64,000 nucleotides of DNA from Ostrea edulis (Eukaryota). Below are positions 1,205 through 15,130 of the stretch, piece by piece (position 1 is the stretch's first letter; each line of letters opens with the position of its first letter). The position numbers and the translations under genes are program-made. A model generated the notes under the pieces. That model did no database searches, was not told the DNA's origin, and was given only the letters and a program-made list of their open reading frames with translations. The stretch covers positions 84,754,001 to 84,818,000 of the forward strand of contig NC_079170.1 of assembly GCF_947568905.1 (NCBI RefSeq). Direction: 5' to 3'.

Positions 1205-1700
1205 ACACATTTCTTTACAGTTCTATCAAGGACTATACAAAGTGTCTTCTGACATGTTTCTTTATCTCTTGTACTCAGTAACAACATTTCTCTACAATTC
1301 TATCAGGGACTATACAGAGCGTCTTCTGACATGTTGCTTTATCTCTTGTACTCAGTAACAACATCTCTTTACAATTTTACCAGGTACTATACAGAGTGTC
1401 TTCTGAGATGTTTCCTCATCTATTGTACTCAGTAACATATCTCTACAACTTTATCAGGGACTATACAGACTGTCTTCTGACATGTTTCTTTATCTCACAC
1501 ATCACTAGCTTGCACCCAGTAATAACATATCTCTACAATTCTATCAGGGACTATACATAGTGTCTTCTGACATGTTTCTTTATCTCACACATCACTCTCT
1601 TGCACCCAGTAACAACATATCTCTACAATTCTACCAGGGACTATACAGAGTGTCTTCTGACATGTTTCTTTAGCTCACACATCGCTCTCTTGTACTTTGA
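1205..1700 (-). repeat. Tandem copies of the CDS end including the stop codon (units 74-90 bp)
   Basis: ctatacagagtgtcttctgacatgtttc (KHVRRHSV* on minus) recurs at 1233, 1310, 1387, 1461, 1551 and 1641. Confidence 0.9.
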
Positions 1701-13200: not shown

Positions 13201-15130
13201 GGAATGACGTAGTCGCGAACATAAGTTTGTTTACAGTAAAGCTTGAATGAACATTAACTATAGATCCAGCAATGTATATAAGAAATTTAAATGATCAAGT
13301 TTCATTACACACTTAATTCAGCACAGTAACAAAAAACAACATTTCTATGGATATCTCTATCATTCAAATATTAATCATGTGTTAATTACTTTATTTTGAA
13401 AAGGGATACTGAGGATTAATTATAAAGCAGATCCCCACTACAATCGGCAGATTTCGGCAGATTCTGGTGCCATATACTACATCTAACCTCAGATGTATGA
13501 TATGAATTGATACGCCTAGCTAACACATGCAATGAGGTCGTCTATTTACTCTCCCGAAAAAAATTCCGGTGTTAGAAAGTAGCAATCAAAATATTTTTTT
13601 AAATGAATTTATCGAGTTTTCCTTGGAAAACAACCCTTTATTTTAAGAAGAAAAAAAAAACACCACCATAATTCTCAAAGAAAAATAGTTACAAACATTG
13701 AAAGTGTTGTATGTTAAGATGGACATATATATTTCGAGGGAGCTGTCAGTAGTTCCAGTTGAACATTGACGTTAACCCCAGAAATTGTAAACATAGGATA
13801 TAACTTGCTGTACTTTTCGGATCAAATCATAAAGATCTCCATAATAAATAATTAACATACACATATAGCTATACATAGCTTATTCAAAAAGTTTAACATA
13901 TTTAAGACATCAACAACAAAAAGACAAAAGTGTGTTTGCGGTTACCTGATCAACCGTAAATTTTCTCCCGACCCTAATTTTCTGGATAAATTCCAGCCCT
14001 TAAATTATTTACTTTGTTTCATGATAAGTTCGGGCTCGATATTCAAATTATCTGTAAAGGTCTAGACCTACAATATAAACAACAACCACTGAGCTTCGCG
14101 AGCGTAGCCATCGAGCACTCGTTACACATTGTAGAACTGCCGACTCCTGTGCTGCAAGTAAATCAACACAGATATACATGCAATTATGTATTAATTTAAA
14201 ATAGGTTAAAATCGGTTGTTAAAATGTGATTGTTTGGTTTATTTTAGTAATACTAATTTTACCTAATACTGAACACTTGATGCTACATGTCAGTATCCAC
14301 AAATGTACGCATCATGTACAAGTTTCTTCCTCATGTAGTGATACGGGGCAATATTTCTTTTTTCAAGATTTAGTCGGAAACACACCTATTTTTTTTGTTG
14401 TTGACCTAATATAAAAACTGTCAATTAATCATAACTTACCATTATAGCATATGATAAAGTCAAAATGATACAGTGATAATCTGAAAACTCAAAACTTATT
14501 GCAGAATCTTCATTTACGTTTAAGGTTGACCACCATTTTCCTGGTCGTCTTATCTTCCTCCACCTGCTTCCTCAGTTCTTCTTCATAATGTAGGTCATTT
14601 TCAGGGTCCATTGATTCGTGACGTAGGAAATCCACCGCCTTTTCATATTTGTTTCTATTCATGAGGAAGGCATCCAGATCCACCATTGTTGATCTAATGG
14701 TGGACCAGATGGAGTTAAAGTCTGTGTTGGACATGGATGGATCACATGAGTGAACACAACGATTCCGGACCAATCGAATCCTCTCGATGTTGGCAGAGAG
14801 ACTCGTGTCATGGGGGTCGGGATCGTTGCCCCAGCCCTTGGAGTGAGGAGATATGTTGCTTATGTTTCTCAATAGGATATACAATAATGAGATGTCCATG
14901 TCATTGTAGACTCCCATATAACCCCCATTCTTAGGTAAAATTAGGTCACGTTGAACAGCCGTCAGACGAGGAAGATTGAGTTTGTTTTGTTTGATGACAT
15001 GATGGAATGTGTATGGTGGAACCTTTTGACGCAGTAAGTCACGTAGACTATCTGTACAGGGACCAAGTACAACTCGACATGCTCTGTTTGCGTTCGTTGT
15101 CTCTGGTTGTGATGCATATAAACTCGCCAT
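1641..15130 (-). CDS. Spliced gene, 5 coding exons, predicted 1769 aa: HEPN (DZIP3-like) - linker - STAND NTPase (nSTAND3-like) - ~21 ankyrin repeats
   Basis: Exons 15130-14518, 12347-12306, 11055-11014, 8150-8103 and 6205-1641, all bounded by GT/AG with phase-1 introns. They sum to 5310 nt with no internal stop. HEPN motif RNRCVH at 14767-14750, Walker A GVPGSGKS at 6089-6066, Walker B VFVIDD, ankyrin consensus TPLIAACxxGHVSIVxxLVKAGADVN. Confidence 0.85.
2235..4297 (-). repeat. Coding 99-bp tandem array (about 21 ankyrin repeats)
   Basis: 33-aa repeats visible at DNA level, with near-identical units at 99-bp and 198-bp period (e.g. 3121 vs 3319). Confidence 0.95.
6738..7822 (+). mobile_element. 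Helentron/HINE-type non-autonomous element carrying ~166-bp satellite-like repeats (intron 4)
   Basis: 5' box caagggtcccatcggccacattgatcacctg, internal ttgatcccctattgtggcccc repeats (7283, 7449), 3' box gatcagaaaatctcactt...gttgagctaaaa. Confidence 0.75.
8103..8150 (-). CDS. 48-nt symmetric exon (DKLEKLTKSPIPQNVR)
   Basis: Strong polypyrimidine acceptor tttattttctttgtttctag|, donor |gtatat. Phase 1/1 and joins in frame to the large exon. Confidence 0.8.
8704..9335 (+). mobile_element. 3'-truncated HINE-type element, same family
   Basis: 5' box aacaagaggtccattggccacattgctcacc, 160-172-bp internal repeats (8791, 8951, 9123). Confidence 0.75.
9337..10990. repeat. 38-bp minisatellite, about 40 copies (intron 3)
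   Basis: Unit catcttatcaacatacaaacatataagtatatactgta (e.g. 9670, 9708), interrupted near 10789-10822 by a Penelope-type terminal fragment. Confidence 0.97.
11014..11055 (-). CDS. 42-nt symmetric micro-exon (GKIEETTKKARILE)
   Basis: Acceptor ctgtttacag|, donor |gtacat, phase 1/1, open, helical/charged composition. Confidence 0.75.
12306..12347 (-). CDS. 42-nt symmetric micro-exon (RRIEQNGEGDRRLD)
   Basis: Acceptor tttttacag|, donor |gtacag, phase 1 at both ends, open in the required frame; paralogous to the 11014-11055 micro-exon. Confidence 0.65.
14518..15130 (-). CDS. Coding exon 1: DZIP3/hRUL138-like HEPN domain
   Basis: ORF with DISLLYILLRN, GWGxxP and ERIRLVRNRCVH motifs. Donor C|GTAAAT at 14518/14517. 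An upstream acceptor (ccccaacag| at 15157) implies a further 5'UTR exon. Confidence 0.85.

What the first reader, a model, noticed from the sequence alone, without database searches (positions are those of the whole stretch)
1641..15130. Animal HEPN-STAND-ankyrin receptor: a candidate NLR/Avs-like, RNase-armed immune sensor
Seen: splicing five exons yields one 1769-aa protein with an N-terminal HEPN domain whose R-N-x3-H motif (RNRCVH, 14767-14750) is intact, a STAND NTPase with intact Walker A/B, and a long C-terminal ankyrin array. The ORF track splits it into two unrelated ORFs 8 kb apart. Established: RxxxxH HEPN domains are RNases activated by dimerisation (RNase L, Ire1, Cas13, bacterial toxins), and STAND NTPases oligomerise on ligand binding in NLRs and bacterial Avs antiviral systems. 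Inference: ligand binding to the ankyrins drives NTPase oligomerisation and switches on RNA cleavage, the components of RNase L-like defence wired like an NLR. Proteins of this architecture are, to my recollection, expanded in bivalves and annotated only as ankyrin proteins; I know of no functional description.
Basis: partly seen in the sequence, partly recalled or inferred. Interest (0 to 1): 0.85.

Follow-up and report, generated by a model that had tools for sequence, protein, structure and literature searches.

The report
Oyster HEPN-STAND-ankyrin receptor gene
This is an intact flat-oyster gene, already in RefSeq as an "uncharacterized protein", that joins a predicted RNA-cutting HEPN domain to an NLR-like switch ATPase and about 21 ankyrin repeats. 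It is one of hundreds of such bivalve genes whose design has been noted in genome surveys but whose function has never been tested.

Summary
On the minus strand, five exons with canonical AG/GT borders translate to 1769 aa. That product is identical, with 0 mismatches, to Ostrea edulis RefSeq XP_048740945.2 (LOC125654883 isoform X1).

- **Domains:** Pfam gives HEPN_DZIP3 (E 1.7e-26; RNRCVH at 14767-14750), nSTAND3 (E 1.4e-22) and about 21 ankyrin repeats.
- **Conservation:** R122 and N123 are invariant and H127 is kept in 67 of 70 relatives. The HEPN exon has dN/dS 0.21-0.42 against 20 genomic paralogues.
- **Fold:** the NTPase model resembles NLRP3, NRC2, NOD2, Apaf-1, MalT, SAMD9 and Avs5.
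- **Swappable head:** divergent relatives keep nSTAND3 plus ankyrin but carry CARD or SAM instead of HEPN, as expected for an effector position.

The NLR/Avs-like, RNase-armed reading is therefore reasonable, but it is inference. It is also not new as an idea. DZIP3-HEPN fusions to STAND NTPases and ankyrins, expanded in oysters, were described in 2013 (PMC3710099), and HEPN-NACHT "NLR-like" proteins in 2021-2022 (PMC8260672, PMC9646362).

I found no RNA joint for this copy. A close paralogue's transcript splices at the same donor, and one RNA-library contig reads through it.

The scan met this family before in the same genome (s1-268684, a broken SAM-HEPN-STAND-ankyrin copy).

Verdict: a new member of a known, functionally untested kind.

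The parts
14518..15130 (-). Coding exon 1 (613 nt, from the ATG): DZIP3/hRUL138-type HEPN domain plus the start of a C-terminal coiled-coil helix. If unspliced, the frame stops at 14510-14512, giving 206 aa.
   Evidence: Pfam PF18738 E 1.7e-26. AF2 pLDDT 88.6, all-helical. Donor GTAAAT. dN/dS 0.21-0.42 against 20 paralogous exons.
14750..14767 (-). HEPN Rx4H motif RNRCVH (R122, N123, H127)
   Evidence: for coordinates. R122 and N123 are invariant and H127 is kept in 67 of 70 relatives. 19 of 20 genomic paralogues keep RN...H.
12306..12347 (-). Mini-exon 2 (42 nt, 14 aa RIEQNGEGDRRLDG), phase 1-1. A degenerate copy of the two-heptad linker cassette.
   Evidence: AG/GT borders. Present in RefSeq X1, X2 and X3. 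Paralogues carry 0 to 4 or more such RIEETAEEARRLDG units.
12348..12384 (-). Alternative first coding segment of RefSeq isoform X3 (ATG at 12384, MNIHQVLHHLFTG, running into exon 2). It gives a HEPN-less 1577-aa product.
   Evidence: and the ORF at 12250-12384. It lies beside a high-copy repeat (bins 12322-12765).
11014..11055 (-). Mini-exon 3 (42 nt, 14 aa KIEETTKKARILE plus a split codon), phase 1-1, linker cassette
8103..8150 (-). Mini-exon 4 (48 nt, DKLEKLTKSPIPQNVR), a conserved pre-NTPase segment. Present in X1, skipped in X2.
   Evidence: The homologous segment KMEKLTKSPIPPNVR is in most paralogues.
1641..6205 (-). Exon 5 (4565 nt including the stop): nSTAND3 NTPase (NBD, helical domain, winged helix), a helical region with disordered inserts, the ankyrin array, and a 197-aa tail without a Pfam match
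6066..6089 (-). Walker A GVPGSGKS (X1 residues 288-295, K294)
   Evidence: G, G, G and K invariant in 48 relatives. Coordinates.
5940..5957 (-). Walker B VFVIDD (X1 332-337, D336/D337)
   Evidence: D64 invariant and D63 kept in at least 90% (ORF numbering). Coordinates.
5298..5312 (-). FIHDS (X1 547-551): an MHD-like His-Asp just after the predicted winged-helix hairpin. Inferred nucleotide-sensing lock.
   Evidence: H276 and D277 (ORF numbering) kept in at least 90% of A2 and in the divergent set A3. Hairpin E265-268/E271-274 in the model. The role is inferred, not tested.
2235..4310 (-). Array of about 21 ankyrin repeats of 33 aa (99-nt tandem units)
   Evidence: Pfam Ank E 5.7e-154. TRF period 99, 20 copies. 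Entropy is highest at repeat positions 1-4, then 21, 12, 33, 28 and 8, while the scaffold is nearly fixed.

Best explanation
This is Ostrea edulis LOC125654883, an intact five-exon gene for a cytosolic tripartite STAND (NLR-like) protein of 1769 aa. Its parts, in order, are: an N-terminal DZIP3-type HEPN domain with an intact Rx4H site; a short coiled-coil linker built from 14-aa (two-heptad) cassette exons; an nSTAND3 P-loop NTPase with NBD, helical and winged-helix modules; and about 21 ankyrin repeats with variable surface positions. It belongs to a very large bivalve lineage-specific expansion. Shown here: the gene structure, the domains, motif conservation, purifying selection on HEPN, and a STAND-like fold. 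Inferred: the ankyrin array holds the NTPase in an ADP-locked state until it binds a non-self or danger ligand. Nucleotide exchange then drives oligomerisation, which clusters or re-orients HEPN dimers already paired through the coiled coil into an active endoribonuclease. That enzyme cuts viral and/or cellular RNA, giving translational arrest or cell death.
For: - **Gene model:** canonical splice sites, and the translation is identical to RefSeq X1.
- **Domains:** HEPN_DZIP3 and nSTAND3 score well above their cut-offs.
- **HEPN site:** R122 and N123 invariant, H127 in 67 of 70; 19 of 20 same-genome paralogues keep the motif, with dN/dS 0.21-0.42.
- **HEPN fold:** AF2 pLDDT 88.6. HEPN proteins are frequent among the best VIA matches: Csm6 Z 8.7, Roquin (a HEPN fold by my knowledge; the entry title does not say so) 8.2, AF_0298 7.2, sacsin 6.3, Cas13 and HepS 5.9.
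- **HEPN pairing:** homodimer model score 0.61 against a best control of 0.08. That mark was reached by 21 of 30 solved homodimers and 0 of 23 monomers; the runs agree in at least 91% of contacts; pLDDT is 88. The interface includes residues 126-131, next to H127, and an a/d-spaced helix at 182-204.
- **NTPase motifs:** Walker A, Walker B and a sensor-1-like Arg (R101) are invariant.
- **NTPase fold:** Foldseek gives NLRP3 NACHT 2.2e-4, SAMD9 4e-4, NOD2, Apaf-1, plant NRCs and EfAvs5 2.7e-3. VIA gives NRC2 Z 10.7 over residues 1-320, STAND-TPR 6mfv 10.1 and MalT 9.4.
- **Fusion is real:** a 6312-nt Logan contig from a related bivalve carries HEPN, nSTAND3 and Ank in one uninterrupted 1753-aa ORF.
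- **Genomic pairing:** at least 16 of the 21 scored nSTAND3 loci in this genome have a HEPN exon upstream on the same strand.
- **Swappable head:** in 32 divergent relatives nSTAND3-Ank is constant, while the N-terminus is HEPN (10), CARD (3) or SAM (1).
- **Ankyrin variation:** it is concentrated at the loop and helix-1 surface positions.
Against: - No transcript joint of this copy was seen. In two probable RNA runs only exon 1 is covered. The one spliced contig leaves at the predicted donor but enters a paralogue-type mini-exon absent from the window.
- A true RNA-Seq contig (14438-14611) reads through the donor.
- RefSeq also models a HEPN-less isoform X3.
- No junction-spanning Logan protein fragment of this gene exists.
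- Foldseek found no significant PDB match for the HEPN model, and the VIA Z values lie in the range that helical bundles reach by chance.
- No DZIP3-type HEPN has a reported RNase assay in the library searched.
- No Avs model of PADLOC matches.
- Nothing shows induction by infection.
Confidence: 0.6

Rival explanations
1. Same protein, but the HEPN domain is not a nuclease. It would act as an RNA-binding or homotypic adaptor module (as CARD does), and the receptor would signal by recruiting other proteins rather than by cutting RNA.
For: CARD and SAM occupy the same N-terminal position in relatives. The coral survey calls the domain RNA-binding (PMC10236652). From my own knowledge, human DZIP3/hRUL138 is known as an RNA-binding RING ligase, not as an RNase. 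No RNase assay for this HEPN family was found.
Against: The catalytic-type RN...H motif is invariant or nearly so over 70 relatives and 19 of 20 paralogues under purifying selection. Inactive HEPN families typically lose this motif (Anantharaman 2013). The predicted dimer puts the residues next to H127 at the interface, as in active HEPN dimers.
Confidence: 0.15
2. Same machine, but not directed at pathogens. The trigger would be retroelements/transposons, allorecognition or transmissible neoplasia, with the family diversifying in an intragenomic or conspecific conflict.
For: The gene sits among transposon remains (LINE, Penelope and Polinton fragments). Takeuchi 2022 proposes viruses and TEs as targets, and Kaur 2021 raises retroelements and transmissible tumour cells for the bivalve expansions. 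The family is huge and copy-number variable.
Against: Nothing specific. No expression or association data of any kind were obtained here, so this differs from the main reading only in the ligand.
Confidence: 0.15
3. In this copy the fusion is not the main product. The locus would chiefly make a HEPN-only 206-aa protein (exon 1 with a retained intron) and a HEPN-less NTPase-ankyrin protein (X3), or be barely expressed at all.
For: An RNA-Seq contig reads through the exon-1 donor. RefSeq isoform X3 starts in intron 1. HEPN-only genes exist in this genome (P0124). No own-gene junction evidence was found in the public runs reachable.
Against: All four introns have good canonical sites and the 1769-aa frame is fully open. 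RefSeq models X1 and X2 join e1 to e5. A near-identical paralogue transcript splices exactly at this donor. The fused ORF exists uninterrupted in a related species' contig. The read-through contig has depth 6 and could be pre-mRNA or DNA carry-over.
Confidence: 0.1

Closest known systems
DZIP3/hRUL138-like HEPN fused to STAND NTPases in invertebrates (Anantharaman et al. 2013, PMC3710099; Emery et al. 2021, PMC8260672; Takeuchi et al. 2022, PMC9646362)
   Same: Same HEPN family (PF18738) at the N-terminus of a tripartite effector-NTPase-repeat protein. The family is expanded lineage-specifically in oysters and cnidarians, keeps Rx4-6H, and has been proposed as an intracellular sensor that degrades viral or TE RNA. 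Ankyrin fusions in 'the oyster' are already listed in the 2013 table.
   Different: The published counts are for NACHT (PF05729) with LRR, TPR or WD40 repeats. Here the NTPase is nSTAND3 with no NACHT hit, and the repeats are ankyrins. In this genome NACHT is rare: 5 weak hits, against 228 first-look candidate nSTAND3 loci of which only 21 were scored. The two-heptad cassette-exon linker has not been described, as far as I could find.
Bacterial Avs5 / AVAST type 5 (SIR2-nSTAND3-TPR)
   Same: Same Pfam NTPase family (nSTAND3) and the same logic of N-terminal enzymatic effector, STAND switch and C-terminal helical repeats. EfAvs5 and the AVAST5 filament are among the structural matches (Foldseek E 2.7e-3; VIA Z 10.4 and 9.2).
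   Different: The effector is HEPN, not SIR2, and the repeats are ankyrin, not TPR/Sel1. No PADLOC Avs model matches; only the candidate PDC-S73 does, at 1.1e-7. Structurally it is no closer to Avs5 than to NLRP3, NRC2 or MalT. This is an animal, intron-containing gene.
RNase L (and Ire1)
   Same: An ankyrin-repeat sensor and a HEPN-superfamily RNase in one polypeptide, with RNA cleavage as an antiviral output.
   Different: RNase L has the order Ank, pseudokinase, KEN-type HEPN. Here the order is reversed, the switch is a STAND NTPase, and the HEPN is of the DZIP3 family. No KEN or kinase profile matched.
Human SAMD9/SAMD9L
   Same: An animal antiviral STAND-type NTPase coupled to an RNA-targeting effector (my knowledge). 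The SAMD9 NTPase is the second-best Foldseek match (E 4e-4). A SAM-HEPN-STAND-Ank paralogue exists in this genome (scan note s1-268684), and SAM occurs in relatives.
   Different: No AlbA, SIR2, TPR or OB domains. The effector fold is different, and there is no sequence-level relationship beyond the P-loop.
Csm6 and Cas13 HEPN nucleases
   Same: Best structural matches of the HEPN model (Csm6 Z 8.7 and 7.1, Cas13 5.9). They are dimeric or dual-HEPN composite sites regulated allosterically.
   Different: They are prokaryotic, activated by CARF or crRNA, and sequence identity is 6-12%.

Membership tests
HEPN superfamily, DZIP3/hRUL138 family (PF18738) | Profile match above the curated cut-off | tested here: met
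   93.1 bits against a cut-off of 27, E 1.7e-26, profile positions 9-144 of 144
HEPN superfamily, DZIP3/hRUL138 family (PF18738) | Rx4-6H motif with a polar residue (N) after R, conserved among relatives | tested here: met
   RNRCVH. R122 and N123 in 70 of 70, H127 in 67 of 70; variants RNKYYGH and RNEYGH are still Rx4-5H. 19 of 20 genomic paralogues keep it.
HEPN superfamily, DZIP3/hRUL138 family (PF18738) | All-alpha HEPN bundle fold | tested here: inconclusive
   The model is confident (pLDDT 88.6) and all-helical. VIA top matches are rich in HEPN proteins (Z 8.7 to 5.9), but such values are common for helical bundles. Foldseek found nothing at E of 0.001 or better.
HEPN superfamily, DZIP3/hRUL138 family (PF18738) | Homodimer with the two motifs at the interface | tested here: inconclusive
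   The prediction passes (0.61 against a control of 0.08) and residues 126-131 are in the interface. This is a model, not a measurement.
HEPN superfamily, DZIP3/hRUL138 family (PF18738) | Metal-independent endoRNase activity | not testable with these tools
   Needs a biochemical assay. No published assay for this family was found.
STAND NTPases (nSTAND3, PF20720) | Profile match above the cut-off | tested here: met
   80.5 bits against 27.2. All 32 divergent relatives also match.
STAND NTPases (nSTAND3, PF20720) | Intact Walker A (GxxxxGK[ST]) and Walker B (hhhhDD) | tested here: met
   GVPGSGKS and VFVIDD. G15, G18, G20, K21 and D64 are invariant in 48 sequences.
STAND NTPases (nSTAND3, PF20720) | NBD, helical domain and winged-helix module followed by superstructure-forming repeats | tested here: met
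   Matches to NRC2 over residues 1-320 (Z 10.7), STAND-TPR 6mfv over 1-391 (Z 10.1), MalT over 1-300 (Z 9.4), and NLRP3 NACHT at E 2.2e-4. The ankyrin array follows.
STAND NTPases (nSTAND3, PF20720) | Ligand- and nucleotide-dependent oligomerisation | not testable with these tools
   Needs SEC-MALS or cryo-EM
NLR in the strict sense (NACHT or NB-ARC plus LRR) | NACHT or NB-ARC profile | tested here: not met
   No PF05729 or PF00931 hit at E of 0.01 or better. The similarity is at fold level only.
NLR in the strict sense (NACHT or NB-ARC plus LRR) | C-terminal leucine-rich repeats | tested here: not met
   Ankyrin repeats instead
Bacterial Avs (AVAST) systems | Match to a defence-system Avs model | tested here: not met
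   PADLOC gives only PDC-S73 (1.1e-7), mad8 and PprDinG, and no Avs model. It shares the Pfam family nSTAND3 with Avs5.
RNase L / Ire1 (KEN-type HEPN) | KEN domain and (pseudo)kinase domain | tested here: not met
   No such Pfam hits on any part

The most novel reading that the evidence does not exclude
HEPN-nSTAND3-ankyrin proteins may be the main intracellular pattern-recognition receptors of true oysters, standing in for the NACHT-LRR NLRs that are nearly absent here (5 weak NACHT hits, against 228 first-look candidate nSTAND3 loci of which 21 were scored). On this reading they are animal counterparts of bacterial Avs5-type sensors. DARPin-like variable ankyrin surfaces would bind pathogen proteins directly, and the output would be HEPN-mediated RNA destruction, that is, abortive infection in an animal. 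The two-heptad cassette exons could tune the coiled-coil spacer by alternative splicing.
Probability: 0.3. Interest if true: 0.75.

Novelty: new member of a known kind. Interest (0 to 1): 0.4.

Why it matters
Animal STAND receptors armed with a nuclease would link bacterial Avs-type abortive infection, RNase L and SAMD9-type RNA-targeting defence with NLR biology. No member of the DZIP3-HEPN/STAND class, which runs to hundreds of genes in bivalves and cnidarians, has been tested. This copy is intact, fully resolved and of manageable size, so it is a usable candidate for that first test. The flat oyster is also a species whose restoration is limited by disease (my knowledge). The finding itself adds a well-checked gene model and some family-level detail rather than a new concept. 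The details are the use of nSTAND3 rather than NACHT in this oyster, the swapping of HEPN with CARD or SAM, the cassette-exon coiled coil, and a predicted constitutive HEPN dimer.

Tried and rejected
- **Own-gene RNA joints.** Two index searches found few RNA holders. Reads could be laid on only one stretch. I chose 10990-15400, which avoids the 38-bp satellite and stays under the operators' 6,000-letter limit. No e1-e2-e3 joint of this copy appeared.
- **Junction-spanning protein fragments.** A search of Logan and JGI proteins with P0001:120-330 found none above 90% identity that cross the linker.
- **The spliced loose end.** The 30-nt loose end from runs X1 and X2 was sought in the window and in the genome. 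There was no match at 3 or fewer mismatches in the window, or at 1 or fewer in the genome. Only related mini-exons on C1 and C6 turned up. It therefore comes from a paralogue or haplotype not in this assembly. The 82 nt at the exon-1 3' end have 35 copies at 84-100% identity, so short contigs cannot be assigned to one copy.
- **Foldseek against the PDB for HEPN:** nothing significant.
- **PDB sequence search with the NTPase profile:** P-loop-only hits such as SRP54 and ORC1.
- **PADLOC:** no Avs hit.
- **Pfam on other parts:** nothing on the 457-aa post-NBD region, the linker, or the 197-aa C-terminal tail beyond degenerate ankyrin.
- **Pseudogene reading rejected:** the frame is fully open, and the HEPN exon has dN/dS well below 1.
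- **Bacterial contamination or HGT island rejected:** the gene has spliceosomal introns and hundreds of bivalve paralogues.

My first brute-force exon search failed only because the range set for the last acceptor was too narrow; this was corrected by reading the sequence.
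Full report
**1. What is in the sequence**

The minus strand carries two long ORFs, 14510-15130 (206 aa) and 1641-6131 (1496 aa). Pfam puts HEPN_DZIP3 on the first (E 1.7e-26; 93.1 bits against a cut-off of 27). 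On the second it puts nSTAND3 (E 1.4e-22; 80.5 against 27.2) followed by about 20 ankyrin repeats.

A protein search identified the organism and the gene. The NTPase region is 100% identical to Ostrea edulis LOC125654883 "uncharacterized protein". That locus has three RefSeq isoforms: X1 of 1769 aa, X2 of 1753 aa and X3 of 1577 aa.

Reading the junctions directly gives five coding exons, each with a pyrimidine-rich AG acceptor and a GT donor:

| Exon | Window coordinates | Length |
|---|---|---|
| e1 | 15130-14518 | 613 nt |
| e2 | 12347-12306 | 42 nt |
| e3 | 11055-11014 | 42 nt |
| e4 | 8150-8103 | 48 nt |
| e5 | 6205-1641 | 4565 nt |

- The translation is 1769 aa and matches X1 (XP_048740945.2) with no mismatch.
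- X2 skips e4. X3 starts at an ATG at 12384 inside intron 1 and lacks HEPN.
- The motif coordinates are right: RNRCVH at 14767-14750, Walker A at 6089-6066 and Walker B at 5957-5940.

**2. Transcript evidence**

This is the weak point. Few public runs hold the gene. I laid 10990-15400 on four runs.

- Run X5 is DNA, with every bin covered.
- Runs X1 and X2 are probably RNA. They cover exon 1 and a high-copy repeat only, with no e2 or e3.
- In both X1 and X2, one contig matches 14519-14569 exactly and then leaves the genome within one base of the predicted donor. The contig's next base also differs from exon 1's last base, 14518. It continues into sequence coding ...NLK|RKIEETAEE.... That is a linker mini-exon of paralogue type, absent from the window and from this assembly at 1 or fewer mismatches.
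- The last 82 nt of exon 1 have 35 copies at 84-100% identity in the genome. The contig therefore shows that this donor is used in a near-identical family member, not necessarily in this copy.
- A 174-nt contig from a genuine RNA-Seq library (run X3) runs straight through the donor (14438-14611). It could be pre-mRNA, DNA carry-over, or a HEPN-only message ending at the in-frame stop 14510-14512.
- No junction-spanning protein fragment of this gene is in the Logan or JGI collections.

Independent support for the fusion as such is good.

- A 6312-nt Logan contig (L001) from a related bivalve has HEPN, nSTAND3 and Ank in one uninterrupted 1753-aa ORF.
- At least 16 of the 21 scored nSTAND3 loci in this genome have a HEPN exon upstream on the same strand, within about 1.5-18 kb.

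**3. The HEPN module**

- In an alignment of 70 relatives, R122 and N123 are invariant and H127 is kept in 67. The variants are still Rx4-5H.
- Twenty paralogous exons fetched from the same genome keep RN...H in 19 cases. Their dN/dS against this exon is 0.21-0.42, so the domain is under purifying selection.
- The AF2 model is confident (pLDDT 88.6) and all-helical.
- Foldseek finds nothing significant in the PDB.
- The exhaustive aligner ranks Csm6 HEPN first (Z 8.7, 115 residues). It places Roquin (a HEPN fold by my knowledge; the entry title does not say so), AF_0298, a second Csm6, sacsin, TTHA HEPN, Cas13 and HepS among the top 50. These Z values are in the range helical bundles can reach by chance, so I count the fold as consistent, not proven.
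- A homodimer prediction passes its controls. The score is 0.61 against a best control of 0.08; the mark was reached by 21 of 30 solved homodimers and 0 of 23 monomers; the runs agree in at least 91% of contacts; pLDDT is 88.
- The symmetric interface contains residues 126-131, next to H127, and the conserved M174-D175-P176.
- The interface also contains residues 182/183, 185/186, 189/190, 192/193, 196/197, 199/200 and 203/204. This 3-4 spacing is that of a parallel coiled coil.

**4. The linker**

e2 and e3 are 42-nt, phase 1-1 exons of 14 aa. Paralogues carry from none to four or more copies of the unit RIEETAEEARRLDG. Its hydrophobic positions (2, 5/6, 9, 12) continue the heptad pattern, so each cassette adds two heptads. 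Together with section 3, this suggests that the HEPN heads are paired constitutively through a coiled coil of variable length. Activation would then be a re-orientation or higher-order clustering (as in Csm6) rather than simple induced dimerisation (as in RNase L). This is inference.

**5. The NTPase**

- In 48 relatives the Walker A residues G, G, G and K, the Walker B D64 (D63 at 90% or more) and an Arg after strand 4 (R101, sensor-1-like) are invariant. A His-Asp pair (FIHDS, X1 547-551) just after the predicted winged-helix hairpin is nearly invariant and is also kept in the divergent set. By position it resembles the MHD motif of plant NLRs. I could not superpose residues, so this is a lead only.
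- The 600-residue model has mean pLDDT 73.7, with the ordered parts at 85-97.
- By Foldseek it matches NLRP3 NACHT (E 2.2e-4), SAMD9 (4e-4), NLRP2, Cdc6, wheat and tomato resistosomes, NOD2, Apaf-1 and EfAvs5 (2.7e-3).
- By the exhaustive aligner it matches NRC2 over residues 1-320 (Z 10.7), EfAvs5 (10.4), a STAND-TPR protein over 1-391 (10.1) and MalT (9.4).
- It is thus a bona fide STAND module, roughly equidistant from several clades.
- No NACHT profile matches and no PADLOC Avs model matches. Bacterial Avs5 carries the same Pfam family.

**6. The sensor end**

There are about 21 repeats of 33 aa (99-nt tandem units). The scaffold is almost fixed. Entropy is highest at positions 1-4, then at 21, 12, 33, 28 and 8. 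Several of these (1-4, 12, 33) lie on the loop and first helix, which by my knowledge form the ankyrin binding face. This agrees with scan note s1-302133 on the same window. The last 197 aa have no profile match beyond one degenerate repeat.

**7. The family**

It holds only 5 weak NACHT matches.
- At 50% clustering, the NTPase-helical profile finds 460 proteins at E of 1e-30 or better and 1078 at 1e-10 or better.
- Among 32 divergent relatives (20-80% identity to the set's first member, most 25-38%, by the whole-protein alignment), all have nSTAND3 and 30 have ankyrins. The N-terminus is HEPN in 10, CARD in 3 and SAM in 1.
- The named members come from Saccostrea, Mytilus and Tegillarca, besides Ostrea and Crassostrea/Magallana.
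UniProt names some "DZIP3-like HEPN domain-containing protein".
- The swap of HEPN with CARD on a constant chassis is the best argument here that HEPN sits in the effector or adaptor slot of an NLR-like receptor.

**8. What is already known**

- Anantharaman et al. [quoted passage not shown] For the related CXorf38 HEPN family, they propose that NTPase and Death modules couple HEPN to a defensive or apoptotic RNA-degrading response, by analogy with RNase L.
- Emery et al. 2021 count 17-83 NACHT-HEPN proteins per anthozoan.
- Takeuchi et al. 2022 report more than 50 pearl-oyster NACHT proteins with N-terminal DZIP3-HEPN. Of 202 proteins, 194 keep Rx4-6H. They call these proteins NLR-like sensors and suggest degradation of viral and TE RNA.
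- Coral and Aplysia surveys note the same domain.
- I found no experimental study of any member.
- The scan itself has already reported a broken SAM-HEPN-STAND-ankyrin paralogue elsewhere in this genome (s1-268684).

**9. Verdict**

Its mechanistic steps are untested, and this copy's own transcripts were not seen spliced.

This is a new, well-resolved member of a known but functionally unexplored class. The incremental points are:
- nSTAND3 (the Avs5-type NTPase) rather than NACHT as the dominant chassis in the flat oyster;
- the interchange of HEPN with CARD or SAM;
- the two-heptad cassette exons;
- a predicted constitutive HEPN dimer.

Noticed in passing
window 9360-10983 (intron 3): A 38-bp satellite of about 43 copies (also seen as a 344-bp higher-order unit). 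Read on the minus strand, its unit closely resembles the intron sequence lying directly 3' of mini-exons e2 and e3 (TATATGTTTGTATGTTGATAG...). The satellite appears to have grown out of the flank of a linker cassette.
   Followed up: partly
window about 12322-12900 (intron 1): A very high-copy repeat: summed contig depth of about 84,000-89,000 in the DNA run, against about 100 in neighbouring bins. Many indel and skip variants are seen, and it is covered in the two probable RNA runs. The start codon of the HEPN-less RefSeq isoform X3 (12384) lies at its edge, so X3 may be driven from a repeat.
   Followed up: partly
window 14438-14611: A 174-nt contig from a true RNA-Seq library (run X3, labelled mollusc metagenome) reads through the exon-1 donor into intron 1, with one A>G difference at 14522. 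It could be a HEPN-only message, pre-mRNA or DNA carry-over.
   Followed up: no
G000 genome-wide: NACHT (PF05729) gives only 5 weak matches (42.6 bits or less), while nSTAND3 gives 228 first-look candidates (21 scored, all passing). Two of the NACHT loci form an inverted pair on C1 (32,291,412- and 32,316,004+), each with its own HEPN exon beside it.
   Followed up: partly
window 15131-15200: Just upstream of the ATG there is a pyrimidine tract followed by CAG (…TTTCCCCAACAG|ATTAGTG…). It looks like a splice acceptor, so a non-coding 5' exon probably lies further upstream.
   Followed up: no
window 934-1692: Tandem repeats of 37/71, 77 and 90 bp lie immediately 3' of the stop codon and overlap the last codons of the gene. 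No AATAAA or ATTAAA occurs in the 540 nt after the stop.
   Followed up: no
relatives P0241 (3411 aa), P0249, P0250, P0053, P0062: Some family members place the nSTAND3 module far inside much longer proteins. Examples are the NTPase at 583-878 of 3411 aa, or behind immunoglobulin domains in Saccostrea. The N-terminal slot can evidently hold large, varied modules.
   Followed up: no
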